Assembly (NCBI GenBank): GCA_002269645.1
Contig: NIVC01001597.1
Coordinates: 186,001-250,000 of the forward strand
Length of the DNA: 64,000 bases
Direction: 5' to 3'
From: Macrostomum lignano
Lineage: Eukaryota
Positions 1 through 50,367 of this stretch are shown here, one piece after another (the first letter of the stretch is position 1; each line of letters starts with the position of its first letter). The notes beneath the pieces were generated by a model. The model did not search any database and was not told the DNA's origin. It worked only from the letters and a program-made list of their open reading frames with translations. Made by a program: the position numbers and the translations under genes.

Positions 1-127
1 AGGTGGAGGGTACTGAAGGGTGGAAAGTGAGAAATCTGAATGACTGTGGTACACATAGCAAGAAATGACAACAGCCATAGAAAAGCCCCGTTAAAAAAGA
101 TGATGAATAAACTCCACCCGCACTCAC

Positions 128-737
128 CCGCTCGAGTTCCACGCCAGCGCTAATAAGGTTATCTTCGAACTTCTTTCGATAGCCGTTGGCAAATCTAAAC
201 CAGTCTTTTTTCTCAGGCGACGGAACCAGATCTTCCTCCCACACGAGAACGTAGTCTGGTGTTCGATAGTGGTAATAAATACGTAATAGAAACAATAGAA
301 ACTCAATAAAAACCATATTGAGGCAACACGACAAAGCAGCTTTCAGACTTACCAACCCTTCGAACCCCATCGTTGAAATAGCAAGCAGACGGGCCTTCGA
401 AAATTTGACTGTCCAGCACAATACTTGACATCGAGTTCACTTCATCCACAGCGCTCGTGACTGCCGGACGTCTAGCATCTTTCAAACTCGAGAAAGTAAG
501 CTTTTTAGACACGTCGCTCATCAATGGAGTCTGAGCAGCACCGGCTCGATTCGGAGACGGCTGAGTCCACGCGTCTTTTCGCATCGGCTGGACCATCGCC
601 ACATTCGGCGCCTGCCTCAGTGCAGCGTCACTTTGGTAGGCAGCAGCGGGCGCTTTCTGACTCAATGAGCTCTGAAGCTGTCTCAGATTCTGAGACTGTC
701 TGGCTTCTAATGATGCTTTTTCTTGCTGAAGTTGCAT
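128..737 (-). CDS. ANO: Anoctamin/TMEM16 paralog 2, N-terminal exons (partial; continues off the left edge of the window)
   Basis: Exon 353-737 ends ...SACYFNDGVRRV G|gtaagt. Exon 128-255 starts accAG|AC TAC and reads [43 protein letters not shown]|gtgagt. The spliced product gives the anoctamin N-terminal motif YFxDGxRRxDYVLV, with the same intron phase as the neighbouring paralog. The true start may lie upstream of 737 (frame is open to ~920). Confidence 0.85.
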
Positions 738-1099
738 CGAAATCGAACTGGCATTCAGCGAAATTCTAGGAACCGTCGCAGTCGCACTCTTGCGCGGTTG
801 ATGCCCTGCTGACGCGTCTGTGGCATGTTTTTGCTGAGGCGCTGACTTTGCAGCTGGCTTCCGGATCTGCGTGTTCTTTGTTTTAATACGATGTTCGTTG
901 AGACCAGGGTGAGGTTTTCAACAGGATTTTGAGGATTTGCCAGCGGGGGAGGGGCAGGACAGAGACGAGTTGCATCCACCGGGCTAGGAGATAGGGGTAG
1001 GGGCCACCCAACAAGAGGCATGGGATACCCAGCACCTGAGAGACAGGATTGCCACAACCTAGATATGTAAGAGACAGGGGCACCAACTTAATAGACTGA

Positions 1100-1610
1100 G
1101 GCACCAACCTGAGGCAGGGACAAGGGCGCCAACCTAAGAGACGGGGTGCCAACCTAAGAGACGCGGTGCCAACCTAAGAGACGGGGTGCCAACCTAAGAG
1201 ACGGGGTGCCAACCTAAGAGACGGGGTGCCAACCTAAGAGACGGGGTGCCAACCTAAGAGACGGGGTGCCAACCTAAGAGACAGGGTGCCAACCTAAGAG
1301 ACGGGGTGCCAACCTAAGAGACGGGGTGCCAACCTAAGAGACGGGGTGCCAACCTAAGAGACGGGGTGCCAACCTAAGAGACGGGGTGCCAACCTAAGAG
1401 ATGGGGTGCCAACCTAAGAGACGGGGTGCCAACCTAAGAGACGGGGTGCCAACCTAAGAGACGGGGTGCCAACCTAAGAGACGGGGTGCCAACCTAAGAG
1501 ACGGGGTGCCAACCTAAGAGACGGGGTGCCAACCTAAGAGACGGGGTGCCAACCTAAGAGACGGGGTGCCAACCTAAGAGACGGGGTGCCAACCTAAGAG
1601 ACAGGGTGCG
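1100..1610. repeat. Minisatellite, 20-bp unit GTGCCAACCTAAGAGACGGG, ~24 copies
   Basis: Near-perfect tandem copies are visible directly and degenerate toward 1040-1130. Confidence 0.95.
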
Positions 1611-2781: not shown

Positions 2782-5700
2782 TTATAAAGCTGCCGAATCT
2801 TCGCATACAATGTCTGAACTGTCTGACGCTCTTCTTTGACGCACTACGTTCGAATTAACTCGATTATGCGAACGCAAAAGCCTCTGCATGCTGCGCTGTT
2901 GCGGTCGTTCTTGTTGCTGATTTTCTTCTGTCTGCTGCTGCTGTTGTTGCTGTTGATTTTGAATTAGTAATTGACTCCGCCGATTATAACGCTGCTGCAT
3001 CACTTGCTGGCGCAACTCAGCGTCCACGAGAGCTTGCCGGCCAAGATAGTTCTGACGCTCGATTCGTTCGACCAGTTTCTTGGGCACTCTTGGGATGAAA
3101 ATCAGTACGAGCCTTCGCAGTGAGAATACCAAGTGCTGTAAAGGGTGTGTGCAGGTGCTTTTGTAAGCGCGTAAATTAAATAGAATCGGTGAATATTGAT
3201 ATCACAACATGCCGAAGTTGTAGCTCAACTCACGCAGCTTGTTGGTAAGTACGAATACCGCATATTTCAAATCATTGTGCAACCAAACTGATACTTTCAA
3301 GGCGAGTGAACGTCCTACCCGATTGCTACCAATAACTGACATGGAATGTAAAATTACATGGCACGACGAAAGCTCGTAAGATGATCCACTTTCCATGAGT
3401 TAGCTCGTAGATGGAAAGTCATGGTGCAAAGGTAAAGCACGCACGCATAGCCTACCAAACAAAAAGTAAATAAAAAAATGAATTAAACTTGCCTCGAATA
3501 CAATTACAAAAGATAGCCGAACTACCAGCAGTTTCCAGTAGAATGGAGTCAAATTTCCCGAACTGTCTCGATAGTTTCTGTACCGACACGGCTGCGATGT
3601 GGTGTTCGGCGGCGACCAAGCCAGCGAGAAGTTGGTGAAGCCGTGTGTATCTGAACTGTGATCAATTTTGTGCAGCATCCTGGCCAAGAAGTCCGACGTG
3701 AAGGCTATCAGAAAGCCCTGCATTGCAGTTGCGCTTCAAGTGTTAGCCAATAGTTGAAAACGGTTCCCAGGCCAAGAAGCGTCCTGGAGTTGCTTGCGTC
3801 GACCCAGATTCGTTTCAGAGTCGTTGCAGGTAACATTGGTAGAACAGGAAAGAAGTGACTCTAGACGATTCTAAAACGACTAGATGTCACACTACGAGCG
3901 TAAAAGTCGCCAAAAAATCGTCAAAGAGTTTTTCAGTGTCAATTTGAAGCGTTATATTTTTCTGCGACTCTGAAACGACTTTGGGGCAACGCAAATGACT
4001 CTGGGACCGTAGAGTCGTATCTGAGACGTGCGAGAGTCGCTGTAGAATCATTATGTTGCGTCGAAAGTGCATCTACGCTCGTACGTCACTTTATGAATTC
4101 GAATCACTCTTTGAATTATAACAACTCTATTTAGTCTACTTGAATTGTTAGAGTTGAATGATGGCACGACTCTAGACAACTTTTCGCGACTCTTTACGAT
4201 TCTGCAGTTCTTGAGATGACTCAAAAGTCGCTTCATCATTGTATTACAGTCGTTTAAGTTGTTAAAAAGTCACAAGAGTCGCTAGTAGAGTCACCAAAGT
4301 TGCTAGAATAAGTTGTTTACCATGGCTCTTCAGCGATTATTGTCACGGTAACATTTTCAAAGGGTACCGTTCTATTCATTTGGCATTATATCTACCGTCC
4401 TATCCTACCCTTCAAAAAGCACTCTATTCGACTGTTGTAAAAGAAATCCTGCACTAATGATAGATTGTGTATTTTGGTTTTGGAGGTAGACAATGATTAA
4501 TTTCAATGTCTTCCTAATGAAACAAAACTTTGAACAACCCGGGTAAAAATCATCATTTTAAGTTCAGCTGATCCGAAATAGCAATTTGAAGTATAGCTTC
4601 AAAACAAGCAAGTGAGCCTTAAAATAATTCTGCAATATTTCAGTGTGCTACGTCCAGAAACAAAGACACTTCTAGTGGTTCTTAGAAAATACATTTACTT
4701 ACATTAGATATAACGGACACCACCGCTATAACGTCAAGCAGGCTGGACCACATGCCAATGCCTTGGAACTGCAAAGACAGCGGTCGGCGAGTATCCTCAA
4801 TCAGTCGTTTGGCAATGATTCGAAGGGCGAGGATATTGTTGAGAAGGGCGAACAGCGGAGCCAGTGGAAAAGCGGCTACAAAAATGGTTGCAAAACCAAA
4901 TTACAGCACCAGCTGCAAAAAGTCGTTCCACAAGCCTTCGAAACTTAACAGGCAGTAGTCCGCCTCCCACGGTTTCAACTTTTGTCCGTTCAATAGCGTC
5001 GTTGAAAAACCGGTACGAATGCCTTGTATATAGATCTTAATTCTTCTGCAGATGAACAAGGTGATTATGTATACTCGTAGCATGGGGTTATAGATCATAG
5101 CAAAGATACTAAAATCGACAAAATGACCAACTTACGGCAGGATTAGATCAATGCAATTGCTGAGCGCCTGTCTGCCTATCATAATAATAGCAAGGGTGAG
5201 CGTCAGATCTAATAAACAGCCACCTTCATCGCACTCCTCTGGCCGGTAGCCAAGCAGGGAGTTGTAGTGTCCTGGGTAGCCGGAAAATCTAAAATTGGTG
5301 GCATTCGAGGCAGCGTTGCGATGGTAACTTGAGAAATTTCGGTTTTTGACGATGAACTCGAGGTTCGATAGGAGTATCGTGTAGCATTAATTTTGAGTAG
5401 CTATTTACAAGCGTATGATCAAGTTAACATAAGGAGAGGAAAGATGAGGGAGAAGAGAGGAGAGATGAAAAGAGGGAGATGAGAGAGGAGAGAGGAGAGA
5501 GGAGAGAGGAGAGAGGAGAGAGGAGAGATGAGAAAGGAGAGAGGAGAGAGGAGAAAGGAGAGGGGAGAGAGGAGAGAGGAGAGATGAGAAAGGAGAGAGG
5601 AGAGAGGAGAGAGGAGATTCGACTAGAGAGCTGAGAAGAGACGCACACCTTAAGCGGGCCGGATTGCTATTGTGAAGTTTGAAAGGACCTCCGGGGGGGG

Positions 5701-8700
5701 CGGAGGTCGCCATCCCCTGCTGTAATAAATGGGGACAGCTGGGCAAACCAATGAGAAAGGATTCGAACTGATTAGAATTCGTTATCATCATCAGACTAAC
5801 CTGCCTTTGAAGAACGCAATATAGAATATTGACGAATAATAGTTCCAAATCTCAAAGATAAATATCTTCATTGTAACCTGATCGTCAAATTCCCATTGCG
5901 TTTTGTGCGCCTCTGAAATCGGATTAACAAATTCAATTCAAAAATTGAATTAGTATATCTTTTGAAAATTATACATCACGATTCGAGGCCGTTGCTTGCC
6001 CCATTCTGTCAGTCGGTAGGCCAGCTGCTTGTACAAAACTTCCAGGGCCAGCATCAGCAGCAGATGCAGCAGAGCGCCCAAGGCGTTAGCGACTGCCCGA
6101 GCTGTCGTGAGTAGCGCCGGCACGCGAATCAGGTACACAATGACGCTCGATTGAAAAGTGATTACGAACAGGATGAAGACGATCACTATGGCGAGCTGAA
6201 GTTGAATTTCGATAGAATAATATTAGCCTTCCTTTTTCCTGTTGAGATTGGCCTTGTTTTAAATTCCCACATGCCTCTCGCTCGTTCTGATGCAAACCGC
6301 ATAAATCTCAAGTTTTCATAGGTTTCCGTTAAAAATGTCTGTCTGCTTAAAGTAACTTAAACTATGGAACCTTTTTTGCCAGCGGATTTGGCGCCCCCCC
6401 CCCCTGCACAACAGCTGGGGCGCCCCTGCCTTGGCGCGGTCCCCTAACATGTAATTTGGCGTTGGTGCTGGCGCCCCTGGTGCTGGCGCCCCTGGTGCTG
6501 GCGCCCCTGGTGCTGGCGCCCCTGGTGCTGGCGCCCCTGGTGCTGGCGCCCCTGGTGCTGGCGCCCCTGGTGCTGGCGCCCCTGGTGCTGGCGCCCCTGG
6601 TGCTGGCGCCCCTGGTGCTGGCGCCCCTGGTGCTGGCGCCCCTGGTGCTGGCGCCCCTGGTGCTGGCGCCCCTGGTGCTGGCGCCCCTGGTGCTGGCGCC
6701 CCTGGTGCTGGCGCCCCTGGTGCTGGCGCCCCTGGTGCTGGCGCCCCTGGTGCTGGCGCCCCTGGTGCTGGCGCCCCTGGTGCTGGCGCCCCTGGTGCTG
6801 GCGCCCCTGGTGCTGGCGCCCTGGTGCTGGCGCTCCTGGTGCTGGCGCCCCTGGTGCTAAAGCTCCTGGTGCTGGAGCCTCGGGTACTAAATAAGCAACC
6901 AGAAAAAGCCTACCATAAAAAGCAGACAAATGTAGCTGCAAATAATTCTAGGCAGTCGTCGAGTGGAAGGAAAATGCGGCTCAATGATGCCAGTGATGGG
7001 GTTCCGTCTGTGCTGGTCGCATCGCGCGGCGAAGCCGGGCCGGGGCCGGCTGATCTCAACACGATAGTTGCTCACGCCCCAGCGATGGGCGAGAGTGGCG
7101 GTGCGACGCTTCCAGAACTCCAGGAAGATCAGAGCTGATTGAGTTTAAGTATAGAATTAATTTAATACCGGTTTAATTCTCATTTACTTCGCTGCAGTCT
7201 AATGTCACTGACAGTCAAATGTCACTGACAGTCAAATGTCACTGACAGTCAAATGTCACTGATAGTCAAATATCACTGATAGTCAAATGTCACTGACAGT
7301 CAAATGTCACTGATAGTCAAATGTCACTGACAGTCAAATATCACTGATAGTCAAATATCACTGATAGTCAAATGTCACTGACAGTCAAATGTCACTGATA
7401 GTCAAATGTCACTGACAGTCAAATATCACTGATAGTCAAATATCACTGATAGTCAAATGTCACTGACAGTCAAATGTCACTGATAGTCAAATGTCACTGA
7501 CAGTCAAATATCACTGATAGTCAAATATCACTGATAGTCAAATGTCACTGACAGTCAAATGTCACTGATAGTCAAATGTCACTGACAGTCAAATGTCACT
7601 GACAGTCAAATTTCGTTGACCCTCACACTTTAGTGCCAATAATCTGTTACTCGTAAGTCGTATTTACAATTGATCGCCCAGTATTTTATATCAAACCACT
7701 AAGTCTTTGTTGAAGCGTTTGTTACATGTAAGTCCATCGATTTAAGGCTAATAAAATAACGTTTGAGCTCACACCAGATCGACATGAAGACAGCGTAAAA
7801 CACGGTGCCATAATTGTCGAAAACGGCCGCCAACTTCAGTTTCCAGCAGATGTCGCTCAAATACCAAAACGGGCAGCCGTCGGCCTCGTCGCAGAATGGG
7901 CACATTTTGAATTCCTTTCCAGCCTTGCAGGTGTCCCGGCTGCAATTGGAAAAATCGTTAAACAAATGCGAACTACGCGAGCTATTATCGAGTTTTATGC
8001 AAACAGCAAATCACCTCACTTGGCAGCATTGAATGGCAGCGATGCCAGACCGTAAACAAAAACGAAGACACCAACTAGGGTAGCCGGGGCAAGCCAAGTT
8101 GTGTAGAAACCTTGAAAATTAGATTAACAGTAGGAACACCAAGCCATTTTTCCGCCCGTCGAACTACCAAGGGGGGGGGAATTCCCCCCTGACAATTTTT
8201 TTGCTGCGCCGGAACGGAGCAACGCAGGCACACGAAATTCAAGAACACGGGCTAACTTTTTGTTGCGCACCTTCTCAAACAAGAATCAAGTCGCCAGCCC
8301 TTCGGACCGTCGAGATATTCGACGATTCTGCCAGAAGGTCGGATTTTTCCCATAAGCGCCAGTGTATTCAGTTCACCCCTGTGCGCCAATCAGCACTGCG
8401 CCTCAGTGCAGCCCTGCCAAGTCTCCAAATTTCATCAGCACGTCGACCACATGTGTCTGCATCAGTTCTGACTTCGTTGGTCACTAGCCTTTACCCAGGT
8501 GGAGCTTCTGGACCCTCGACAGCTGTGGGACCAGGTGACTATGGACACCCTGATGCGGATTTCTCTAGTTTCGCCGATCAAGCCTCGACAGTGGGCAAGA
8601 ATCAACCGTCAGACATTCTCAGCTAGTCTCTCAAGCATTCCGTCATCATCCCGACGCCGTCGGCACCTTCAACAGATTACACCAGGTGACTATGGACAGC

Positions 8701-11625
8701 CTGATAAGAATTTCTCTAGTTTTGCTGATCAAGCCTCGACAGTGGGCAAAAATCAACTGCTGGACATCCTCAGCTAGTCAGTCAAGCATTCAGCCATCAC
8801 CCGGACGCCGTCGGCACCTTCAACAGGTGGCACCAGGTGACTATGAAGATCCTGTTGAAACGATGTCAGATTTTTCTTATCAAGCTTCAATAATGGGCAA
8901 ACCTCAACTGCCGGACATTCTCAGCTAGTCTCTCGAGCCTTCAGTCATCACCCCGACGCCGTCTCAGTAAAAAGTCACTATAATGAATTGCTTGCAATGA
9001 CTATTCAGCTATTCTTGTCACGGCAACATTTTGAACGGGTTAGTCCGCTTTATCTCACCTAGCCAAGCGAAGAAGAAGGCGATCTTCTCGCCAAAGTAGT
9101 CACGCACGTGGTCAAGCGGCTGAAATTTGTACCAACAGCGCCAGTTGGCCCAGTGCAGATGGAGAAGCTGTCTCAGATTGAGTTCGGGCTTCTGCTGCTG
9201 CTGTTTAGCGGTCTCTGGCTGATTGTTCTTGCAGTTTGCATTGCAGCTTTGTCTGGTGGTCTCCCCAGGCAGGTACGGTCCCTGTAAATGAAAGATTCAT
9301 TTTGGAATTGATGGCAGGGGAGACTCGCGCAGATCAGAGCTACATGTGCGTGTCTGCGTGTGTGCTTAATGTGATATACTTTGATTGTTTGACTAAGTTA
9401 ACCTCCATTCTCCGTCCCCCGCGCGTGTCTCCGCGTACATTGTCTGTCTGTTGCATTTCTATTCAATGTACATCGCTCATTAGAATTTTTAACCACCCTT
9501 AGTTCGCTTGCGCTAAGTCTCCGACTGGAATGTACTTTAAATAAACAAACTCGGGCAATCCTGACAGAGAACAACTCTCCCCTCCATACACCAGATTCTA
9601 CTGTATATTACAACAGTCAAATTTGAAACTATCAAATACATCGGACTACAGGGGGTACTCGTACATCACATTTGTAGGTGCAACGCAGGAAAAAGTCTGT
9701 CAAATCTGAGAACTGAGAACTGTTTCAGCTTACCTCGTGCAGCGGAAACGCGCACAGGTAAAATTCATCATTAATCATCCGATCGATACCGATTTCGCCC
9801 CTTCGAGAGTTGCCAAACAGCCGAGTGGACAGCAGCTCGTAGGTCACCAACTGGCGCTGTTTCTGGGAGAAAAAAGAGTCGCCGTTGTGTATCCCGATGA
9901 AGCTGCGGACGGATAGGTGATGGACGTTCGGAGTGAAATTATCCCAGTGACTTATTCTATGAAAATCGAACCGAAGTGCAGGGACATCAGGGCGGTAAAC
10001 ATATCCCTATCAGGCCATGGACCCTACTTTTTCTAGTTATCGCTAACTCTAGAGGTACGGTTATTGCGCTCATCAGTTTTGAGAAGTGCGGAGCACTTCA
10101 TCTACAACTGCACAGCCTCGCTGATCTCGGTCTAATTATACATCGCTCTGAAATTTTCTCTCTGCAGGGGGACCGCGATGCGGACACCGGCACCACCGGA
10201 TCTCCCTGCGCGAAACTGCAGCACCAGTTGCCCGTGGTTGCCAGGGGTTAGCAAAATGGGGGTCGACGGCTCCCCGCTGTATCCGGGTGCCCGGAGTCAA
10301 GTATAAGTACAGAATTTACTTAGAAATGAAGTGGAGGATGGTAAGGAACGCTTGTTTGTGGTTCTGATTCTTATATGATCTTATTCTCTGATCTTTACGG
10401 CATGCTTTCAATGTGAGGTTGCTGGTGTCTATGGCCGAATTAGCTCGTATCAATTCCGACGAAAGCACACACTATCCAACTCACTTGTGCATTTTGGCAG
10501 CGGAGAAGCCGCAAGTGTAAAACAGCTGCGCTTTCCTTGGCACAGCTGTTCCCAGCGCAATCTCGTCCATTGGCTAAAAATCGAAAGAAAAAACGCACCG
10601 ATTTTTGAAGAGTATTTTATCTTCATTTTTCTATCTTCAGCACCAAAACTCAAACCTTCAAGGGTGCCCTTAGTTTGAGATTTTCCGCATGGCAGCACAT
10701 GGCCTCCCAGGTGACGTAGAGCTTGAGAAAGTGCAACCGTTTTGTTGATGTCTCCCTTACAGCCTGTGATGTAGGGTTAGCAGAGTCATTGTAGATAGAT
10801 AGATTAGGTAGGGAAACTGTGAACTAGTGTAAATGGCTAAAATAAGCGACAGAGGGGCTCGTGAAGCTCCCTTGGTTAGAAAAACAGCAGCAATTTTTAA
10901 AGCAAACCTTCTCCATTTCTACTCCGGCTTGTTTCAGATGGTAGTGAAAATTTTGTCTGCACTTCATGCTTCTCTCAATTTGCAGCGTCTCGGGTGCATT
11001 GGGATCTTCTTCCCACACCAGCACGTAGTCTAAGGGGTCGGGGGCAGCCGTTGTGAGAAAGACTTTCATTTGGGGCTAGGGGGTCGCTGACTGACTTAGT
11101 GTCAATTTGGGGGGTCACTGAGCGACTCAATCTCAATCAGGGGTCACTGAGCGACTCAATCTCAATTAGGGGTCACTGACTGACTCAGTCTCAATCAGGG
11201 GTCACTGACTGACTCAGTCTCAATCAGGGGTCACTGACTGACTCAGTCTCAATCAGGGGGTCACTGACTGACTCAATCTCAATCAGGGGTCACTGACTGA
11301 CTCAGTCTCAATCAGGGGGTCACTGACTGACTCAATCTCAATCAGGGGGTCACTGACTGACTCAATCTCAATCAGGGGGTCACTGACTGACTCAATCTCA
11401 ATGAGGGATCTCTAGTACTGACCTACTCAGTCTCTCAACAGGTGAAAGAACCTCACTGGAACTGCACGTAGAGAATTTTATATTCACAGACCAATCTCAC
11501 TCACCTATTCGCCTAATTCCATCATCAAAATAATAGCCAAACTGATGTTGATCTCGACTAGACTGGACAAAGACTGATCCTTGGTCGCTGAGCCGAGAAT
11601 TCTGCCGGTCCAAGGAGACTGACAT
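2782..11625 (-). CDS. ANO: Anoctamin/TMEM16 family protein, 15 exons, ~897 codons, with one in-frame TAA at 4901-4903 (possible pseudogene, null allele or sequence error)
   Basis: Exons (minus): 11505-11625, 10908-11029, 10656-10763, 10485-10573, 9734-9902, 9059-9281, 8020-8110, 7773-7939, 6914-7134, 6000-6195, 5801-5912, 5136-5288, 4703-5045, 3493-3717, 2782-3135 (2694 nt, phases consistent). Motifs: [127 protein letters not shown]-type [20 protein letters not shown]. Confidence 0.93.
3765..4350. mobile_element. Dispersed GAGTC/GACTC-rich non-coding repeat, copy 1 (in anoctamin intron)
   Basis: Shares blocks such as cccaggccaagaagcgtcc and gactctggg...gagtcgtatctgag.cgtgc..gagtcgctgtagaatc with 12030-12560 and ~26000-26310, all in the same orientation. 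Confidence 0.75.
5430..5690. mobile_element. Fragment of hAT-like MITE family carrying an (AGAGG)n tract (in anoctamin intron)
   Basis: Purine tract followed by ctgagaagaga...ccggattgctattgtga, shared with ~20900-21085, 59587-60135 (reverse) and 60183-60625. Confidence 0.65.
6456..6855. repeat. Minisatellite, 15-bp unit CTGGTGCTGGCGCCC, ~26 copies, intronic
   Basis: Perfect tandem array. It accounts for the LVLAP/GRQHQ ORFs. Confidence 0.95.
7200..7612. repeat. Minisatellite, 17-bp unit AAATGTCACTGACAGTC, ~24 copies, intronic
   Basis: Tandem array with two point-variant types. The unit contains the quasi-palindrome GTCACTGAC. Confidence 0.95.
8525..8965. repeat. Three diverged ~150-bp direct repeats, intronic
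   Basis: ccaggtgactatg(g/a) recurs at ~8531, ~8681 and ~8834, each followed by ...tcaagc(c/t)tc..cagtgggcaa...gacat.ctcagctagtc. Confidence 0.85.
11105..11402. repeat. Minisatellite, 29-30-bp unit GGGGTCACTGACTGACTCAGTCTCAATCA, ~10 copies, in first anoctamin intron
   Basis: Tandem copies are visible directly. Confidence 0.92.
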
Positions 11626-11934
11626 TGCTTCATCAGATTAGCGTTGATGCGCTCAGTTCTTGCTCAACACGCGGCAAAAAATATTGCGTGCGAACAGACT
11701 AAACGCGTGTTAACTTCAACTTCCTAATTATTTGGCCCATAGAATAGTGACTACCTAACGCGTTACGTATATATATAGTGTTTCAAGCAAGGACTACTTA
11801 AAAATTCAGGACGTTGCACTCACGTGTGGTTAATGATGTCTTTTGATATGTCTAGCCAAATGGAATGGTATTTTTGAAAATGAGGTGCTATCGCGTGGTT
11901 CTAGTAGCGAAAATCGTCTACTTCAATTTGCATT

Positions 11935-12565
11935 ACTGATCAATCTGGTGTCGGACAATCGATGAGCGGGACGATTGCGCTCACTGACGACAGAGACAAT
12001 GAACGCGTTGTACTGAACTGTTTCAATGAGCACGGTAACCCAGGCCAAGAAGCGTCCCCAGAGTCATTTGCGTCGCTCCAGAGTCGTTGTAGATGATACA
12101 TATAAAATAGGAGATAAGTGACTCTAAACGACGAGATGTCGTCACGGTAAAAGTCCTCCAAAAAACGTCAAAAGATTCGCTCAAAAGTCAGTTTGAAGTG
12201 TTTTTATCGTCTGCGACTCTAATAACGACTCTGGGGCGACGCAAGTGTCTCTGTCGCGACGATATTAACAGACTCTGAGGCCGAAGAGTCGTATATGAGG
12301 CGTGCTTGAGTCGCTGTAGAATCAGCTGCGTTTGAAGCGCATTTGTGTCGCATACTGAATTGGAGTCATATCTCTAGCAAAAATTGAGCGCCGAAACAAT
12401 TCTTGAATGACTCTTTCGCGACTCTTTTACGATTCTACAACTCGCGTGACGCGCTTGTGTCGCAACAGCCGCCTCTCCGTCGCATTAGACGCGCTTTAGT
12501 CGTTGAAAAGTCACAAGAGTCGCCACAGAGTCTCTAGAGTCACTAGCGAGTTGTTGACAGGAATG
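11935..12565. mobile_element. Dispersed GAGTC/GACTC-rich repeat, copy 2, fused to the 24-bp satellite
   Basis: Homologous to 3765-4350 and 26000-26310. Confidence 0.75.
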
Positions 12566-12569
12566 TCGG

Positions 12570-14780
12570 CTTGAGTCTCCTCGGAATGTCAGTTTGAGTC
12601 TCTCACGGAATGTCAGTTTGAGTCTCTCACGGAATGTCAGTTTGAGTCTCTCATGGAATGTCAGTTTGAGTCTCTCATGGAATGTCAGTTTGAGTCTCTC
12701 ATGGAATGTCAGTTTGAGTCTCTCACGGAATGTCAGTTTGAGTCTCTCACGGAATGTCAGTTTGAGTCTCTCACGGAATGTCAGTTTGAGTCTCTCATGG
12801 AATGTCAGTTTGAGTCTCTCATGGAATGTCAGTTTGAGTCTCTCACGGAATGTCAGTTTGAGTCTCTCATGGAATGTCAGTTTGAGTCTCTCATGGAATG
12901 TCAGTTTGAGTCTCTCATGGAATGTCAGTTTGAGTCTCTCATGGAATGTCAGTTTGAGTCTCTCATGGAATGTCAGTTTGAGTCTCTCATGGAATGTCAG
13001 TTTGAGTCTCTCATGGAATGTCAGTTTGAGTCTCTCACGGAATGTCAGTTTGAGTCTCTCATGGAATGTCAGTTTGAGTCTCTCACGGAATGTCAGTTTG
13101 AGTCTCTCATGGAATGTCAGTTTGAGTCTCTCATGGAATGTCAGTTTGAGTCTCTCACGGAATGTCAGTTTGAGTCTCTCATGGAATGTCAGTTTGAGTC
13201 TCTCATGGAATGTCAGTTTGAGTCTCTCATGGAATGTCGGCTTGAGTCTCTCATGGAATGTCAGTTTGAGTCTCTCATGGAATGTCAGTTTAAATCTCTC
13301 ACGGAATGTCAGTTTGAGTCTCTCGCAGAATTTCAGTTTGAGTCTCTCATGGAATGTCAGTTTGAGTCTCTCATGGAATGTCAGTTTGAGTCTCTCACGG
13401 AATGTCAGTTTGAGTCTCTCATGGAATGTCAGTTTGATTCTCTCACGGAATGTCAGTTTGAGTCTCTCGCAGAATTTCAGTTTGAGTCTCTCATGGAATG
13501 TCAGTTTGAGTCTCTCACGGAATGTCAGTTTGAGTCTCTCATGGAATGTCAGTTTGAGTCTCTCATGGAATGTCAGTTTGAGTCTCTCATGGAATGTCAG
13601 TTTGAGTCTCTCACGGAATGTCAGTTTGAGTCTCTCATGAAATGTCAGTTTGAGTCTCTCACGGAATGTCGGCTTGAGTCTCTCACAGAATGTCAGTTTG
13701 AGTCTCTCATGGAATTTCAGTTTGAGTCTCTCACGAAATGTCAATTTGAGTCTCTCATGGAATTTCAGTTTGAGTCTCTCACGGAATGTCAATTTGAGTC
13801 TCTCACGGAATGTCAATTTGAGTCTCTCATGGAATGTCAGTTTGAGTCTCTCACGGAATGTCAATTTGAGTCTCTCACGGAATGTCAATTTGAGTCTCTC
13901 ATGGAATGTCAGTTTGAGTCTCTCACGGAATGTCAGTTTGAGTCTCTCATGGAATTTCAGTTTGAGTCTCTCATGGAATGTCGGCTTGAGTCTCTCACGG
14001 AATGTCAGTTTGAGTCTTTCACGGAATTTCAGTTTGAGTCTCTCACGGAATGTCAGTTTGAGTCTCTCATGGAATTTCAGTTTGAGTCTCTCATGGGATG
14101 TCAGTTTGAGTCTCTCATGGAATGTCAGTTTGAGTCTCTCACGGAATGTCAGTTGGAGTCTCTCTTGGAATTTCAGTTTGAGTCTCTCATGGAATGTCAG
14201 TTTGAGTCTCTCATGTAATGTCAGTTTGAGTCTCTCATGTAATGTCAGTTTGAGTCTCTCATGTAATGTCAGTTTGAGTCTCTCACGGAATGTCAGTTTG
14301 AGTCTCTCATGTAATGTCAGTTTGAGTCTCTCACGGAATGTCAGTTTGAGTCTCTCATGTAATGTCAGTTCGAGTCTCACAGAATGTCAGTTTGAGTCTC
14401 TCATGTAATGTCAGTTTGAGTCTTTCGCAGAATGTCAGTTTGAATCTCTCACGGAATGTCAGTTTGAGTATCTCACGGAATGTCAGTTTGAGTCTCTCAC
14501 GGAATGTCAGTTTGAGTCTCTCATGGAATGTCAGTTTGAGTCTCTCATGGAATGTCAGTTTGAGTCTCTTATGGAATGTCAGTTTGAGTCTCTCATGGGA
14601 TGTCAGTTTGAGTCTCTCATGGAATGTCAGTTTGAGTCTCTCATGGAATGTCAGTTTGAGTCTCTCATGGAATGTCAGTTTGAGTCTCTCATGGGATGTC
14701 AGTTTGAGTCTCTCACGGAATGTCAGTTTGAGTCTCTCTCGCGGAATGTCAGTTTGAGTCTCTCTCATGGAATGTCATTT
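12570..14780. repeat. Satellite, 24-bp unit GAATGTCAGTTTGAGTCTCTCA(C/T)G, ~90 copies
   Basis: Continuous tandem array. It explains the 631/521/348-aa periodic ORFs, which are open in several frames on both strands. Confidence 0.97.
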
Positions 14781-15148
14781 TAGTCTCTCTTGTGGAATTT
14801 TTGGCAAGGAGAGGCTTTGGTTTGTTGTGGCTGGTGCTGTTTTTTTATCACTCAATCACATCAGTCATCAATCGCATCACGATCGATTCCCGTAAACTAT
14901 TCCTGAACATAAATGTAGTGGCATAGCAGCTTACACCGGTCATGCGTCACGCAATAGACGGAAATGGTTAAAAATTTTAATGACGAGTTTATTGTACTGA
15001 GAAAAATTCATCAATGAAACAAAGGTTTTTGCCGCTGCTGCTCGCAGCCAATAGAACTGCATCTGCTGCTATTTAAAAGTGGGATCTTTGCTGCTGCTGT
15101 TGTTGCTGCAGCTTCTGTTAGACGCTCGACTGGTGTTTTCATCTCAAA

Positions 15149-21085: not shown

Positions 21086-21941
21086 GCTAAGGTGACCGAG
21101 CCGGATGCATCAGATGCACACATCCGCGTCTACTCTGTTCCTACTTGGTTATAGCAATCTATGTTTGCTTTATCGTTTTCTACACTTGAGTAAACGACAG
21201 TTATATTTCCTCTTTACCGCATCAACCTCCTCTTCTCTCCCTTGTCATCTGTTCCCCCTGGCTACCGGTTCCTAAAGACGGTTGTTCCAATAAAGATATA
21301 CCGATGAACATTCGAAAGCAAACCGCTATTTTCACATACAAATAAGCAGCATAAGAATTGCTCAGCAAACGTGCTGTTGTATTTTTTACAGATGTACTTT
21401 TAAAGCAATACAGCTAATTACACAGCGGCTTAACAACCGTCAAAGAGCAAAGAGTACACAATGATTGGTAGCATTGACAAACGGGAGAAAATGCAGCAAT
21501 TTAAAGACAAATTTACAGAGTTTTCAATTTCGTCAGCATTATGAAGGAAGCTGATCGGTAAGAGTTGAAAATAAATATTATTTAAATGTTATTTAAGCAG
21601 CATCGCATTGCAAGAGGTGATGTAGCAAGCAAGAAATAAAATCGCACCATTTTATCAGTAGCAACGCATTTGCCTACTCACCCACAGGAGTAGAGTGTAA
21701 CGAGTTAATTATTACTTTTAAAAAAAGTAAGAAAATTTGCTGATCTACAATTTAAACTGCGTTTGCCTCCCAATACAAGCTACTAACAGTAGCCAGTTGG
21801 CTGAGAGTGAAATTTAATTGAGCTGAAATGAATTCTACCTAAATATTACAGCGGCTTGTTGAAGACAAAAGAGTATAACAAATACTGCTGGGAAGTGGAG
21901 ACAGGAATTAAATATGGAATAAGGAGGTTAGATAACAGGGA

Positions 21942-22480
21942 AATTAAAGATTAGATAACAGGGAAATTAAAGATTAGATAACAGGGAAATTAGAGATTAG
22001 ATAACAGGGAAATTATAGATTATATAACAGGGAAATTAAAGATTAGATAACAGGGAAATTAAAGATTAGATAACAGGGAAATTAAAGATTAGATAACAGG
22101 GAAATTAGAGATTAGATAACAGGGAAATTATAGATTATATAACAGGGAAATTAAAGATTAGATAACAGGGAAATTAAAGATTAGATAACAGGGAAATTAG
22201 AGATTAGATAACAGGGAAATTAAAGATTAGATAACAGGGAAATTAAAGATTAGATAACAGGGGATTAGAGATTAAATAAAAGGGAAATTAGAGATTAGAT
22301 AACAGGGGAATTAGAGATTAGATAACAGGGGAATTAGAGATTAGATAACAGGGAAATTAGAGATTAGATAACAGGGGAATTAGAGATTAGATAACAGGGG
22401 ATTAGAGATTAGATAACAGGGAAATTAAAGATTAGATAACAGGGAAATTAGAAATTAAATAAAAGGGGAATTAGAGATTA
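21942..22480. repeat. Minisatellite, 23-bp unit GATAACAGGGAAATTA(A/G)AGATTA, ~23 copies, just downstream of the HP1 stop
   Basis: Tandem array is visible directly. Confidence 0.93.
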
Positions 22481-22672
22481 GATAGGATACCTAAGTTTAA
22501 TTGAGAATTAGAAAATGACCAACCAACCCCCAAGGTCAAGGTAAACAGACTTAAGATGCTAGCATTGGTAAAACAAAATATTAGCATGGGTGCGTGCAAA
22601 ACAGCTACCTGGGAAGCAGAACGTACAGAAGCACTAGAAACTACAGGTACTATTGTACAAATTATAATCAGT

Positions 22673-26628: not shown

Positions 26629-28829
26629 TCAGATAAGTGTATAGTAGTCTGTGTAGCCCACTGCTCCAGTTGGTGTCCGCCCAACTCGCCGATGTTCCCG
26701 CTGTCTGCGAATGACCCGACGCCGCTTATTGAGCTGCTTGGCCAGCTTACGAGACAGACAGGCGCCAAGTAGCTGCACAAACAGCCAAGCAGCGGACGCG
26801 CCTACCACCAGCCAAGCGTTGCTAAGCAACCAGCCACCAGTTGCGGTCAAGCAGCCATCGGTAAAGATTTTAGCGCTAGCATTGACACCGAGGCTCCGGC
26901 CGCAGTTGAGATTGTTAGCCAGAGATTGAGCACGGCAACAGGAGGCTGGAATGCTGCATCGTGTTGGCAAGGTATTGGCCGCATCGCAGCTGTAGACTGT
27001 GTCCATCACATACCAGTCCCGGTATGCAGCTGGCCCGGCCACACCGCAGCAGCCGACTTTTGCTTGCGCCACTTCTAGCAGCCAAACGCTTGCGTTGTTG
27101 AAAATCTTCTCCCGAACCATCGTAGAGTTGGTGGCGTTAATTACTGCCTGATGCCATGGCAACAGTTTAGAGCAGAATGAATCCGACAAGCGGCAACCGA
27201 GTAACAGGCTAGTAGCGACCAGCTGGCACAGGGCCAGGAATATCACTGAGATAGCGAACTGGTTGGGGAGTGGCACGTGTTTGTCTAATTTGAAGATCAC
27301 ATAATTGGACATCAGAATTCCTATTTAGAACTAAGTTTTTTATTGGGATTGGATTCCAAATTTGAAATCTGGATTTTCCTTTTTAGGCCTGGATTCCCAA
27401 TTTATAATTGGGATTTCCAACCTAAAGGTCGGATTCCTCATTTAGAATCATATTCTCCAAATTAGGATTGGGATTCCCTTTTTAGGACTAAATTCCTCAC
27501 ACTAGGATTGGGATTCCCCTTTTCAGGACTGGATTGCCCTCATTAGAAATGGGATTCCCCTTTTCAGGACTGGATTGCCCTCATTAGAATTGGGATTCCC
27601 CTTTTCAGGACTGGATTGCCCTTATTAGGATTGGGATTCCCCTTTTCAGGACTGGATTGCCCTCATTAGAATTGGGATTCCCCTTTTCAGGACTGGATTG
27701 CCCTCATTAGAATTGGGATTCCCCTTTTCAGGACTGGATTTCCCTCATTAAAATTGGGATTCCCCTTTTCAGGACTAGATTCCCTACATTAGGATTGGGA
27801 TTCCCCTTTTCAGGACTGGATTGCCCTCTTTAGGATTGAGGATTCCCCTTTTCAGGACTGGATTCCCTACATTAGGATTGGGATTCCCCTTTTCAGGACT
27901 GGATTGCCCTCATTAGGATTGGGATTCCCCTTTTCAGGACTGGATTTCCCTCATTAGAATTGGGATTCCCCTTTTCAGGACTAGATTCCCTACATTAGGA
28001 TTGGGATTCCCCTTTTCAGGACTAGATTCCCTACATTAGGATTGGGATTCCCCTTTTCAGGACTGGATTGCCCTCTTTAGGATTGAGGATTCCCCTTTTC
28101 AGGACTGGATTGCCCTCATTAGAATTGGGATTCCAGGACTGGATTGCCCTCATTAGGATTGGGATTCCCCTTTTCAGGACTAGATTCCCTACATTAGGAT
28201 TGAGGATTCCCCTTTTCAGGACTGGATTGCCCTCATTAGGATTGAGGATTCCCTTTTTCAGGACTGGATTGCCCTCATTAGAATTGGGATTCCCCTTTTT
28301 TAGGACTGGATTGCCCTCATTAGGATGGGGATTCCCCTTTTCAGGACTGGATTGCCCTCATTAGGATGGGGATTCCCCTTTTCAGGACTGGATTGCCCTC
28401 ATTAGAATTGGGATTCCCCTTTTCAGGACTGGATTGCCCTCATTAGAATTGGGATTCCCCTTTTCAGGACTGGATTTCACTCATTAGAATTGGGATTCCA
28501 GGACTGGATTGCCCTTATTGAGGTTGGGATTTCCTATGTTAAAACGGGATTCTCCACAAAAGGATTAAAATCTGGAACATCTGGATTGGCTTACTAAACA
28601 TAATTTTGATTTACCACGAGAAAGTTGCTTATATACTTACAAATCTCAAACAGCAGGGCAGGTCTCGTAGCGACCCAGCGCAAGCAAATGTAGACAGGAA
28701 TAAGACAATGGAGCAGAATGCCAGCAGCAAACAGAATGGATCAGTGAGGGCGGCACTGACTGATTGATAGTTGGCAGAGTTGCTAATTAGTTGCCAAACA
28801 GCCAGGCAGCAAGCCACGCCTGATGCTAT
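26629..28829 (-). CDS. Tetraspanin, TspanC8-like (8 cysteines in the large extracellular loop); 5' exon not located
   Basis: Exon 28641-28829 ([14 protein letters not shown]...[20 protein letters not shown]|gtaagt). Exon 26629-27258 (aaccag|[13 protein letters not shown]...[11 protein letters not shown]...SC...RCSIPASCC...NCG...IFTDGC...TM4). CCG, PxSCC and GC motifs present. Confidence 0.88.
27465..28520. repeat. Minisatellite, 41-bp unit GGATTGGGATTCCCCTTTTCAGGACTGGATTGCCCTCATTA, ~25 copies, in tetraspanin intron
   Basis: 41-bp period (e.g. cattag at 27541 and 27582). Confidence 0.95.
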
Positions 28830-40900: not shown

Positions 40901-41985
40901 GTCATGTAAACAATCATAGAAGCGTCATGTAAAAATCGTAGAAGCGTCATGTAAACAATCATAGAAGCGTCATGTAAAAAATCATAGAAGCGTCATGTAA
41001 AAAATCTTAGAAGCGTCATGTAAACAATCATAGAAGCGTCATGTAAACAATCATAGAAGCGTCATATAAAAATCGTAGAAGCGTCATGTAAAAATCATAG
41101 AAGCGTCATATAAAAATCGTAGAAGCGTCATGTAAACAATCATAGAAGCGTCATGTAAAAATCGTAGAAGCGTCATGTAAACAATCATAGAAGCGTCATG
41201 TAAAAAATCATAGAAGCGTCATGTAAAAAATCATAGAAGCGTCATATAAAAATCGTAGAAGCGTCATGTAAACAATCATAAAAGCGTCATGTAAAAAATC
41301 GTAGAAGCGTCATGTAAAAAATCTTAGAAGCGTCATGTAAAAAATCATAGAAGCGTCATGTAAACAATCATAGAAGCGTCATGTAAACAATCATAGAAGC
41401 GTCATGTAAAAAATCGTAGAAGCGTCATGTAAAAAATCTTAGAAGCGTCATGTTAACAATCATAGAAGCGTCATGTAAACAATCATAGAAGCGTCATGTA
41501 AACAATCATAGAAGCGTCATGTAAAAAATCATAGAAGCGTCATATAAAAATCGTAGAAGCGTCATGTAAACAATCATAGAAGCGTCATGTAAACAATCAT
41601 AGAAGCGTCATGTAAACAATCATAGAAGCGTCATGTAAACAATCATAGAAGCGTCATGTAAACAATCATAGAAGCGTCATGTAAACAATCATAGAAGCGT
41701 CATGTAAAAAATCATAGAAGCGCCATGTAAAAAATCATAGAAGCGTCATGTAAACAATCATAGAAGCGTCATGTAAAAAATCATAGAAGCGTCATGTAAA
41801 AAATCATAGAAGCGTCATATAAAAATCGTAGAAGCGTCATGTAAACAATCATAAAAGCGTCATGTAAAAAATCTTAGAAGCGTCATGTAAACAATCATAG
41901 AAGCGTCATGTAAACAATCATAGAAGCGTCATGTAAAAATCATAGAAGCGTCAAGAAAAAATCATAGAAGCCTCATTTAAAAACT
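37966..41985. repeat. Satellite, 22-23-bp unit TAGAAGCGTCATGTAAA(C/A)AATCA, ~175 copies, with 434-bp higher-order repeat at the left end
   Basis: Continuous array. The rare variant cataaaagcg recurs at 38008, 38442 and 38876. Confidence 0.97.
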
Positions 41986-42059
41986 AATGAAAGTGTCATT
42001 TAAAAAAATTAAGAAGCGTCACGGTAGAATAAAAGAAACGTCATGTCAGACATGAAGGG

Positions 42060-49140: not shown

Positions 49141-50367
49141 TCAAAATAATCAATACTACGTCCTCTAGCACTGCGTCATACCTATATTTCTCGAATACCA
49201 TTTGTAATTGGCTTTCCCGGCGGTGCTGAAGGATTTTTTAAAGTCTGAAGCCTCACTGATGATGGACGGACAGGCAAATTAGGCAAGCAAATCTTTCATT
49301 AAATCAAAGTAAAACTGATTTCGGCAATCATCATAGAATCTGAAATCCTTGAAAATATAAAATTAAAACCGTTTAATTAGGCCATCCAAGCCATACGACA
49401 CAGGTGGCTTAGCTGGTGCAAGTCCACGAAGAAAGTGAAAAGCTTTCCAGGCTCATATCGAAATGTCACGCGATGTTTCACTATCGGGTCTTCCGAACAG
49501 AAAAACCTCCCAACTAATTGCAGATCTGCAGGATTAATTATCTTGTGGAAAAGAATTTGATTGAAGCAAAATTGCAAAGCAAACTCACAAATCATGCGTG
49601 TGCTTAATGAAATCCTGCTGATCAATGTTTTTCTAGGATGTCATGATTTTTCGTTGAAGCCAAATTCAAAGTATAGCATTTCTTTGCGAATTTTCTTGAA
49701 AATTTCACTTTTTCGAGAAAAAAATCCCCATTTATGGCGCAAAAGAAACATTAAGTGTGGTAATTTTTATGCAATATTTCATCGAAGGGCCAAAGCTCAA
49801 GCCGATTGGCTGCAGAGGAGAGAAGAACTGAATGGTATATTCTTCTGCAGTCGAGATGCATGATATTGAACCAAAGCCGTGCATTCGGTAGCATTATTGT
49901 ATTCCAAACGTCGCACCAAAAATAATTTGAGCAACTGCTCACTCAATCGACTGAACTGCGTCGAGAATAGCTTTAGTACAATATTAGGTTGGTTTGATTA
50001 AGCTGCAGAACCTGAACGACAACAAAGGACTGCAGATTGAGTTTGTTCCAAAATGAAATTAATTTTTGTTTTTTTATTGAAGTGATAATAAAAAGAGCTT
50101 GAGGCTTCTAGCAAAGCTCACACTTGATTTGCTGCCCTCACGGGAATTGCGATTGCAGAAATCTGCTCTCAATCTCCTCTCCTCTTGAGCCAGCCAATCA
50201 AACTGCTGCGCGCTAAAGCCAGTGGAAATTTCCTGATGAGAGAAAGGTAAAAAAGCGAGACAGACAGAGCCTGTCTGCAATCCCGCTGCAATTGAAAATT
50301 GGAATTCCGGAAACTCACTTCGGACTCATCGAACTCTATAAGAAGGTCTCAACAACCTACAACTCAA

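What the first reader, a model, noticed from the sequence alone, without database searches (positions are those of the whole stretch)
4808..5170. Anoctamin that has lost most of the conserved Ca2+-binding acidic residues
Seen: TM6 [16 protein letters not shown]7 DFLQLVL*FGF, TM8 [13 protein letters not shown]. Known: TMEM16A binds Ca2+ through N650/E654 (TM6), E702/E705 (EYMEMIIQFGF) and E734/D738 (NNIIEIRLDAKK). By alignment this protein has E654->D, E702->D, E705->Q, E734->A and D738->I, while the flanking TM sequence stays well conserved. Inference: three clustered ligand losses in an otherwise constrained protein fit a Ca2+-independent (constitutive, voltage- or mechano-gated) or non-conducting anoctamin subtype better than random decay. 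This is the most promising protein-level novelty in the window.
Basis: partly seen in the sequence, partly recalled or inferred. Interest (0 to 1): 0.72.

Follow-up and report, generated by a model that had tools for sequence, protein, structure and literature searches.

The report
Flatworm anoctamin with dismantled calcium sites
This is a flatworm (Macrostomum) copy of an ANO7-like anoctamin that selection has kept although most of its calcium-binding residues are gone, so it is probably not switched on by calcium, and this particular copy also carries one recent premature stop codon.

Summary
On the minus strand lies a complete 15-exon ANO7/TMEM16G-like anoctamin gene (window 11625..2782). 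By TMEM16A numbering its Ca2+ ligands read N650S, N651N, E654D, E702D, E705Q, E734A, D738I. There is one in-frame TAA (4903..4901) at a family-invariant Gln.

The nearest relative is Macrostomum lignano PAA80633.1 (97% identical). It has the same substitutions (His at E705) but CAA (Gln) instead of the stop.

This is not random decay:
- dN/dS between the two copies is 0.19 (0.09 in the membrane domain), with dS 0.06.
- All 14 introns keep their splice sites.
- 5 of 6 invariant ligand columns changed, against 27 of 201 other invariant columns (P=3.6e-4).
- The third Ca2+ site is also lost (TM10 Asp to Arg, Asp to Leu).
- No other anoctamin among about 430 with TM8 readable has lost both TM8 acids.

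The gene is the first of a Macrostomum-specific tandem array (A-B-C).

Best reading: a selected, probably Ca2+-insensitive TMEM16. The closest functional analogue is yeast IST2, a constitutive scramblase. The window copy is a recently nonsense-hit duplicate, or the stop is a base-call error. Function is untested. It is a new variant of a known kind, of moderate interest.

The parts
2782..11625 (-). Gene A: ANO7/TMEM16G-like anoctamin with 15 exons and 897 codons plus terminator. Exons (high..low): 11625-11505, 11029-10908, 10763-10656, 10573-10485, 9902-9734, 9281-9059, 8110-8020, 7939-7773, 7134-6914, 6195-6000, 5912-5801, 5288-5136, 5045-4703, 3717-3493, 3135-2782.
   Evidence: Pfam Anoctamin 7.7e-122 and Anoct_dimer 9.2e-44. 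Exons were mapped from the exact M. lignano model. All splice sites are conserved, including two shared GC donors.
5136..5288 (-). Exon 12. Encodes the TM6 hinge and the Ca2+-ligand segment [18 protein letters not shown]. Codons: Ser 5161-5159 (N650), Asn 5158-5156 (N651), Asp 5149-5147 (E654).
4703..5045 (-). Exon 13. Encodes the TM6-TM7 linker, TM7 and TM8. Codons: Asp 4924-4922 (E702), Gln 4915-4913 (E705), Ala 4828-4826 (E734), Ile 4816-4814 (D738).
4901..4903 (-). In-frame TAA at codon 639, where M. lignano has CAA (Gln of the invariant LQFGF motif). It lies 198 nt upstream of the exon 13/14 junction. It is the only nonsense codon in the gene.
3088..3105 (-). TM10 part of the third Ca2+ site. 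Leu 3105-3103 stands at TMEM16A(a) D879. Arg 3090-3088 stands at D884, equal to mTMEM16F D859.
   Evidence: Family alignment, HMMER alignment to TMEM16F chain numbering, site definition in PMC7786149.
7118..7120 (-). TM2 Glu of the third Ca2+ site (TMEM16A E425 / TMEM16F E395). It is retained, and so is the following WKR Lys.
5851..5853 (-). TM5 position in the FIFQFVN motif: the family's near-invariant Gln is Glu here and in gene C. From memory, this position corresponds to TMEM16F Q559 / TMEM16A K588.
   Evidence: The role of this position in ion selectivity is from memory.
11625..11633 (-). 5' end. A 1-bp deletion relative to M. lignano puts the upstream ATG (11633) out of frame. The second ATG (11625, purine at -3) opens the long frame.
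1..917 (-). Start of gene B, a second tandem anoctamin that runs off the window. Its N-terminal exons encode ...YFNDGVRRV / [22 protein letters not shown]...
   Evidence: It matches the middle part of the fused M. lignano model P0241 and the second Anoctamin gene in L001.

Best explanation
Gene A is a lineage-specific paralogue of the ANO7/TMEM16G-like anoctamins in Macrostomum (M. lignano or a very close relative). It is the first member of a tandem array A-B-C.

Shown:
- It keeps the TMEM16 architecture: the dimerisation domain, the ten-helix membrane domain, the TM6 Gly hinge and the [16 protein letters not shown] core.
- Its principal two-Ca2+ site has gone from five acidic ligands to two Asp. 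E705 became Gln or His, E734 became Ala and D738 became Ile.
- The accessory TM2/TM10 Ca2+ site has lost both TM10 Asp residues, to Leu and Arg.
- The gene has evolved under purifying selection since these changes.

Inferred: the intact protein cannot be gated by Ca2+ in the canonical way, because neutralising these ligands severely diminishes Ca2+ activation in TMEM16A. It most likely works as a Ca2+-insensitive TMEM16. It could be a constitutive or otherwise-gated lipid scramblase or leak channel, as yeast IST2 is after losing three alpha7/alpha8 acids. Alternatively it could be a silent partner that dimerises with its tandem paralogues. The Arg at the third site might pair with the retained TM2 Glu and stand in for the cation (speculative).

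The window copy differs from the intact M. lignano copy by one CAA->TAA change, with no other sign of decay. It is therefore a very recently inactivated duplicate (a homeologue in this neopolyploid, or a sibling-species copy), or the stop is a base-call error.
For: - Family and fold: Pfam, PDB sequence matches, AF2 model with pLDDT 84.9 and pTM 0.82, Foldseek best match mTMEM16F with target TM-score 0.86.
- Ligand mapping.
- Uniqueness: the five acids are near-invariant in 118 other ANO7-like proteins. The TM8 E/D pair is kept in 301 of 303 other sequences and in 122 of 124 motifs among library representatives.
- An intact copy has the same losses: P0001.
- Selection: dS 0.059, dN 0.011, omega 0.19, membrane-domain omega 0.09, binomial P 1e-9, intron mismatch 0.064. 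All splice sites are kept. Derived amino-acid changes are symmetric, 7 against 6.
- Concentration on ligands: Fisher P=3.6e-4.
- Tandem clade: 98% bootstrap, the L001 gene list, the fused model P0241, and preprint 10.1101/2022.04.22.489151.
- Functional precedents: IST2 (PMC12618243). Neutralising orthosteric ligands severely diminishes Ca2+ activation, and D879A/D884A abolishes third-site sensing (PMC7786149).
- Neopolyploidy of M. lignano, with three subgenomes: PMC10733133.
Against: - No functional data exist.
- Two Asp and one Asn ligand remain, so weak or single-ion Ca2+ binding is not excluded.
- Unlike IST2, no Lys occupies the principal site.
- In TMEM16A/F, neutralising these ligands gives inactive rather than constitutively active proteins, so loss of transport is as plausible as constitutive transport.
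- No orthologue or transcript fragment was found outside the two M. lignano database entries, so expression is unverified and the age of the subtype is unknown.
- omega was measured between only two copies and averages both lineages.
- The window copy has a nonsense codon and possibly a start-proximal frameshift.
- Divergence from L001 (intron mismatch ~6%) is higher than the ~2% typical between M. lignano subgenomes, so the source species is uncertain.
Confidence: 0.6

Rival explanations
1. Plain pseudogene. A redundant tandem or polyploid duplicate is decaying, and the ligand losses are part of that decay.
For: The in-frame TAA at an invariant Gln. A possible frameshift of the first ATG. A long branch in the tree. 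No transcripts or orthologues found in the protein collections. Neopolyploid genomes shed duplicates (PMC10733133).
Against: Omega is 0.19 overall and 0.09 in the membrane domain. All 28 splice-site dinucleotides are kept. 175 of 207 invariant columns are kept and most of the other changes are conservative. The intact copy shares every ligand loss. The stop-bearing copy has no excess of derived changes. Only the last step, the nonsense mutation in this copy, fits decay.
Confidence: 0.12
2. The stop is not biological. It is a sequencing or assembly error, or a heterozygous SNP, and this copy is as functional as P0001.
For: It is a single transition (CAA->TAA) in an otherwise clean 897-codon frame with conserved splice sites and no follow-on decay. 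M. lignano assemblies are error-prone because of three near-identical subgenomes.
Against: Nothing in the sequence marks the base as doubtful, and it is not in a homopolymer. Loss of one of several redundant copies is expected in a neopolyploid.
Confidence: 0.2
3. The protein is still Ca2+-regulated, through a remodelled low-affinity or single-ion site (Asp at 654 and 702, Asn651, Gln/His705) or through a partner such as a Ca2+-binding protein.
For: Two carboxylates and one Asn remain, and the TM6 hinge Gly and the TM2 Glu/Lys of the third site are kept.
Against: Both TM8 ligands are replaced by hydrophobic residues and both TM10 Asp are gone. In TMEM16A, neutralising orthosteric ligands severely diminishes Ca2+ activation, and D879A/D884A abolishes third-site sensing.
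Confidence: 0.15
4. It is a non-transporting subunit or scaffold: a dead-site protomer that heterodimerises with tandem paralogues B and C (which keep the acids) and modulates them, or has a structural or tethering role.
For: The dimerisation domain and the core are conserved. It is co-located with ligand-competent paralogues. Neutralised-site TMEM16A mutants are poorly active.
Against: There is no evidence for heteromers here. Groove-side residues are also under constraint (membrane-domain omega 0.09), which is not required of a pure scaffold.
Confidence: 0.25

Closest known systems
ANO7 / TMEM16G-like anoctamins of animals (for example M. lignano A0A1I8HU17 = P0020, trematode and mollusc 'anoctamin-7-like' proteins)
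   Same: Best full-length hits at 41-45% identity. Same two Pfam domains. Placed inside this clade. 175 of 207 invariant columns shared. TMEM16F-like predicted fold.
   Different: Canonical members have (N/S)N-E-E-E-E-D at the Ca2+ site almost without exception. Gene A has S-N-D-D-Q/H-A-I. It also lacks both TM10 acids of the third site and has Glu instead of the near-invariant TM5 Gln.
M. lignano PAA80633.1 / BOX15_Mlig004871g1 (P0001; UniProt A0A267G3N1)
   Same: 97% identical at protein level. Same 15-exon structure, same ligand losses and same tandem neighbours. Already listed as one of three linked TMEM16G genes in preprint 10.1101/2022.04.22.489151.
   Different: P0001 has CAA (Gln) where the window has TAA, and His instead of Gln at E705. 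There are 24 amino-acid differences including the stop, one 12-bp in-frame indel and a 1-bp difference at the first ATG. dS is 0.06. The preprint passages retrieved do not mention the ligand loss.
Yeast IST2 (TMEM16 homologue, ER-PM tether, constitutive scramblase; PMC12618243)
   Same: A natural TMEM16 in which three of the five conserved acids, on alpha7 and alpha8, are substituted. Activity no longer depends on Ca2+. This is the best model for how gene A may work.
   Different: Not orthologous (fungal, TMEM16H/K-like). IST2 places a Lys at the E705-equivalent position, which salt-bridges to the retained alpha6 Glu and alpha8 Asp. Gene A has Gln or His there and no alpha8 acid. IST2 has a long tethering C-terminus that binds OSH6, and nothing comparable was seen here.
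Engineered TMEM16A/F Ca2+-site mutants (E702Q/E705Q, E734Q/D738N, D879A/D884A)
   Same: The same positions are neutralised.
   Different: The laboratory mutants are loss-of-sensitivity variants with no selective history. Gene A combines these changes naturally and has been kept under purifying selection.

Membership tests
Anoctamin / TMEM16 superfamily | Anoctamin membrane domain (PF04547) plus N-terminal dimerisation domain (PF16178) | tested here: met
   E=7.7e-122 and 9.2e-44, near full-length profile coverage.
Anoctamin / TMEM16 superfamily | Ten-helix TMEM16 fold | tested here: met
   AF2 model of the intact copy has pLDDT 84.9 and pTM 0.82. Foldseek top hits are mTMEM16F/A with target TM-score 0.81-0.87.
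Ca2+-activated TMEM16 (channels and scramblases) | Five acidic ligands on TM6-TM8 (E654, E702, E705, E734, D738) forming the two-Ca2+ site | tested here: not met
   Only two remain, both as Asp. E705Q/H, E734A and D738I are the other three.
Ca2+-activated TMEM16 (channels and scramblases) | Third Ca2+ site: TM2 Glu plus TM10 Asp pair (TMEM16A E425, D879, D884; TMEM16F E395, D859) | tested here: not met
   The TM2 Glu and Lys are kept, but D879->Leu and D884/D859->Arg.
Ca2+-activated TMEM16 (channels and scramblases) | TM6 glycine hinge (G644 in TMEM16A) | tested here: met
   IIMIG-RQ is conserved, and the adjacent Lys is Arg.
Ca2+-activated TMEM16 (channels and scramblases) | Ca2+-dependent current or lipid scrambling | not testable with these tools
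   Needs expression or reconstitution.
ANO7 / TMEM16G subfamily | Phylogenetic placement with ANO7-like proteins | tested here: met
   All top hits are anoctamin-7(-like). The NJ tree places the A+B+C clade (98% bootstrap) among flatworm and other ANO7-like sequences. The preprint classifies PAA80633.1 as TMEM16G. NJ only; deeper nodes are weakly supported.
IST2-type constitutive scramblase | Substitution of alpha7/alpha8 acidic ligands | tested here: met
   Three substituted, as in IST2.
IST2-type constitutive scramblase | Lys at the E705-equivalent position replacing Ca2+ by a salt bridge to retained alpha6 and alpha8 acids | tested here: not met
   Gln (window) or His (P0001) stands at that position, and no alpha8 acid is left.
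IST2-type constitutive scramblase | Ca2+-independent scrambling in vitro | not testable with these tools
Processed or decaying pseudogene | Multiple disabling lesions, lost splice sites, dN/dS near 1 | tested here: not met
   One nonsense codon only. Introns are present and all splice sites are intact. Omega is 0.19. The window copy qualifies at most as a very young unitary null.

The most novel reading that the evidence does not exclude
An animal TMEM16 has given up Ca2+ gating altogether and has been kept by selection. Its principal site is neutralised and made hydrophobic, and the accessory site carries an Arg that could act as a built-in cation. This would make it a constitutively active, or differently gated, scramblase or channel: a metazoan counterpart of yeast IST2 that arose independently inside the ANO7 clade.
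Probability: 0.3. Interest if true: 0.6.

Novelty: new variant of a known kind. Interest (0 to 1): 0.42.

Why it matters
The five acidic Ca2+ ligands are among the most conserved features of TMEM16 proteins. Here they were essentially invariant in several hundred relatives.

A natural animal paralogue that has dismantled both the principal and the accessory Ca2+ sites, yet stays under purifying selection, is a ready-made experiment on two questions. What does a TMEM16 do without its ligand? How can gating be rewired? The only characterised precedent retrieved here is fungal IST2.

It also bears on ANO7, the least understood mammalian anoctamin. It shows early duplicate fate (divergence, then loss of one copy) in the neopolyploid model flatworm M. 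lignano, where RNAi and transgenesis are available.

The scope is limited: one lineage, no expression or functional data, and the copy in this window is itself broken.

Tried and rejected
1. Alternative genetic code (TAA = Gln), considered because the stop sits on an invariant Gln. Rejected: it is the only in-frame stop in 897 codons, the M. lignano copy has CAA there, and that copy's own terminator is TAA.
2. Gapped TM6 alignment to TMEM16A, which suggested N651 was deleted. Replaced by the ungapped in-family alignment.
3. Searches for orthologues or transcript fragments, using the full protein, a 241-aa TM6-TM10 query and the 114-aa exon 13. Nothing above 62% identity except P0001/P0241. These searches appear to return only proteins of roughly the query's length, so the negatives are moderate evidence.
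4. Full-library HMMER scan with the TM7b-TM8 segment. The three outstanding hits scored high only because they contain duplicated segments, and all keep TM8 Glu. P0001 itself is hidden inside a 50%-identity cluster, so this scan cannot reveal close orthologues.
5. P0241 as a third copy for polarising changes. It is the same copy as P0001 inside a fused gene model.
6. Exact look-up of the window's intronless GPCR to identify the source assembly: not on record.
7. The AF2 model could not be used to inspect the site geometry or a possible Arg-Glu salt bridge, because coordinates are not returned. Only fold and confidence were obtained.
8. No tRNA genes were found.
Full report
**What is there.**
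The region is eukaryotic, with introns and many minisatellites. A rough concatenation of the exon-like segments matches Pfam Anoctamin (E=7.7e-122) and the anoctamin dimerisation domain (E=9.2e-44) over nearly their full lengths. It also matches solved TMEM16A and TMEM16F chains at E~1e-120. tblastn of this protein against the window shows one complete gene. It also shows the N-terminal exons of a second anoctamin at the window's start.

**Source and gene model.**
- The only close relative in the 5.8-billion-protein collection is Macrostomum lignano PAA80633.1 (P0001). Everything else is at most 45% identical and is named anoctamin-7(-like).
- I fetched the DNA encoding P0001 (L001, GCA_002269645.1 contig NIVC01000572.1). 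I solved its 15-exon structure exactly and transferred it to the window by DNA alignment.
- The window gene runs from the ATG at 11625 to a terminator at 2784..2782. All 14 introns have the same splice dinucleotides as in M. lignano, including two shared GC donors.
- Relative to P0001 it has 33 synonymous and 24 non-synonymous codon differences and one 12-bp in-frame indel. There is a single nonsense codon, TAA for CAA, at codon 639 (window 4903..4901).
- A 1-bp deletion near the 5' end puts the first ATG of the M. lignano model out of frame. The second ATG, 8 nt downstream and with a better -3 purine, opens the long frame, so this may be harmless.
- The two loci are colinear over about 21 kb at 90-95% identity and share the same minisatellites with different copy numbers.
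- M. lignano is a neopolyploid with three subgenomes that differ by roughly 2% SNPs (PMC10733133). The window is therefore either a homeologous copy or the orthologue from a sibling species. An exact look-up of an intronless GPCR from the window found no record, so the source assembly is unidentified.

**The Ca2+ sites.**
- HMMER alignment to mouse TMEM16A (5OYB numbering) confirms E654D, E702D, E705Q, E734A and D738I.
- Within the ANO7-like family TM6 aligns without a gap. This gives N650S (Ser is common in ANO7s) and N651 retained.
- P0001 has the same pattern, with His at E705. Gln (CAG) is one step from Glu and His (CAT) one further step, so Gln is probably the older state.
- In 118 other ANO7-like proteins from sponges to mammals the five acids are essentially invariant.
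- None of 120 further fragments lost a TM8 acid.
- A motif count finds E...D in 301 of 303 other sequences. The two exceptions are conservative D/E swaps.
- Among representatives returned by an exhaustive scan of 1.84 billion cluster representatives, 122 of 124 TM8 motifs are E...D. The exceptions are single changes.
- The accessory third site is also gone. The TM2 Glu and Lys are kept, but the TM10 residues aligned to TMEM16A D879 and D884 (TMEM16F D859) are Leu and Arg. The site definition and mutational effects come from PMC7786149.
- The near-invariant Gln of TM5 (FIFQFVN) is Glu in genes A and C. From memory, this corresponds to TMEM16F Q559 / TMEM16A K588, a position linked to ion selectivity.

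**Decay or selection.**

| Measure (Nei-Gojobori, window against L001) | Value |
|---|---|
| dS | 0.059 |
| dN | 0.011 |
| omega, whole gene | 0.19 |
| omega, membrane domain | 0.09 |
| omega, remainder | 0.51 |
| Binomial P against neutrality | 1e-9 |
| Mismatch over 4.7 kb of aligned intron | 0.064 |

- Intron mismatch is close to dS, so synonymous sites behave neutrally.
- Polarising the amino-acid differences with the family alignment gives 7 changes derived in the window copy (including the stop) against 6 in P0001. The stop-bearing copy shows no extra decay.
- Of 207 family columns at least 95% conserved, gene A keeps 175, and all 32 changes are shared by both copies apart from Gln/His at the E705 position. 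Five of 6 ligand columns are changed against 27 of 201 others (Fisher P=3.6e-4), and most non-ligand changes are conservative.
- The tandem paralogue C has the same overall number of changes (32) but only conservative ones at ligand positions.
- The ligand losses are therefore specific, older than the split of the two copies, and followed by purifying selection. The nonsense mutation is a late, isolated event, or an error.

**Evolutionary context.**
- L001 carries a second Anoctamin gene 3.4 kb downstream.
- The UniRef model P0241 fuses gene A, gene B, a retroelement fragment and gene C.
- A preprint on metazoan TMEM16 evolution lists PAA80633.1, PAA80632.1 and PAA80631.1 as linked TMEM16G genes. 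It notes the expanded repertoire of M. lignano. The passages I retrieved do not mention ligand loss (10.1101/2022.04.22.489151).
- An NJ tree places A, B and C in one clade (98% bootstrap) with long branches inside the ANO7-like family. A is sister to B+C.
- B and C keep the TM7/TM8 acids, so the losses map to gene A's own stem.
- No orthologue or transcript fragment from any other sample was found. Expression is therefore unverified.

**Structure.**
An AF2 model of the intact copy is confident (pLDDT 84.9, pTM 0.82, TM6-TM8 blocks mostly above 85). It superposes best on mouse TMEM16F (target TM-score 0.86, rmsd ~4 A). The fold is intact.

**Mechanism.**
- Shown: an intact TMEM16 scaffold under constraint, with both kinds of Ca2+ site chemically dismantled.
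- Established knowledge: neutralising the orthosteric ligands severely diminishes Ca2+ activation of TMEM16A, and D879A/D884A abolishes third-site sensing. Yeast IST2 has three alpha7/alpha8 acids replaced and a Lys standing in for Ca2+, and it is a constitutively active scramblase (PMC12618243).
- Inference: the intact gene A product is not Ca2+-gated in the canonical way. It may transport lipids or ions constitutively or under another cue (IST2-like), or it may be a silent partner of its ligand-competent tandem paralogues. I cannot decide between these.
- Differences from IST2: there is no Lys in the principal site. The only introduced cation is the Arg at the third site, which may pair with the retained TM2 Glu (speculative).
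- The window copy: the TAA lies before TM7-TM10 and 198 nt upstream of the next exon junction. If real, it should give a truncated product and probably nonsense-mediated decay (inference).

**Verdict.**
However, this copy is itself broken, the subtype is known only from Macrostomum, and its function is untested. It is a new variant of a known kind and of moderate interest.

Noticed in passing
window 1-917 (minus strand): Start of a second, tandem anoctamin gene (gene B) that runs off the window. In M. lignano the array is A-B-retroelement-C. B and C keep the TM7/TM8 acidic ligands. C has V/Q at the N650/N651 positions and Asn at the third-site Asp.
   Followed up: partly
window 12560-14789: A 24-bp minisatellite of about 93 copies lies about 1 kb upstream of gene A's start. 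It creates long spurious ORFs on both strands. The same repeat, with fewer copies, is present upstream of the M. lignano copy (L001 ~8211-8445).
   Followed up: partly
window 1124-1609, 5434-5617, 6463-6879, 7195-7611, 8530-8963, 11078-11407: Minisatellites lie between genes A and B (20-bp unit) and inside introns 11, 9, 8, 6 and 1 of gene A (units of 7, 15, 17/85, 151 and 29/59 bp). Copy-number differences explain most intron length differences from the M. lignano copy.
   Followed up: partly
window 37966-42021; also 21924-22484, 27461-28499, 58330-59424: Further large tandem arrays: 23 bp x 177 copies (4 kb), 23 bp x 24, 41 bp x 25 and 18 bp x 62. The last creates spurious ORFs of more than 400 aa.
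   Followed up: no
window 6000/5999 and 3493/3492 (minus strand donor sites of introns 10 and 14): Two introns use GC instead of GT donors (GCAAGC, GCAAGT). Both are conserved in the M. lignano copy.
   Followed up: yes
window 11625-11633 (minus strand): A 1-bp deletion relative to M. lignano, in a run of A between two ATGs, leaves the upstream ATG out of frame. This could be a second lesion, or harmless if the second ATG is the real start.
   Followed up: partly
window ~9270-9260 (exon 6, minus strand): A 12-bp in-frame indel relative to M. lignano (GPYLPGETT against GPYQVPGLSGEPT) lies in a poorly conserved, low-pLDDT cytosolic loop.
   Followed up: partly
window 26629-27312 (-), 50299-51591 (+), 61674-62717 (+): Other coding pieces in the window: a tetraspanin exon (Pfam E=1.5e-14), an apparently intronless rhodopsin-type GPCR (7tm_1, E=2.3e-8) and a DXD-motif glycosyltransferase (Gly_transf_sug, E=5.4e-10). 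The last also gave a sub-threshold TcdA_TcdB match that covers only the shared DXD region.
   Followed up: partly
P0349 (library representative, not in the window): An unrelated anoctamin model contains a duplicated TM7-TM8 segment whose second copy has His at the D738 position (ILELRLHAFR). P0442 and P0357 have single TM8 changes (G...E, N...E). Isolated ligand changes therefore occur elsewhere, but none loses both TM8 acids.
   Followed up: no
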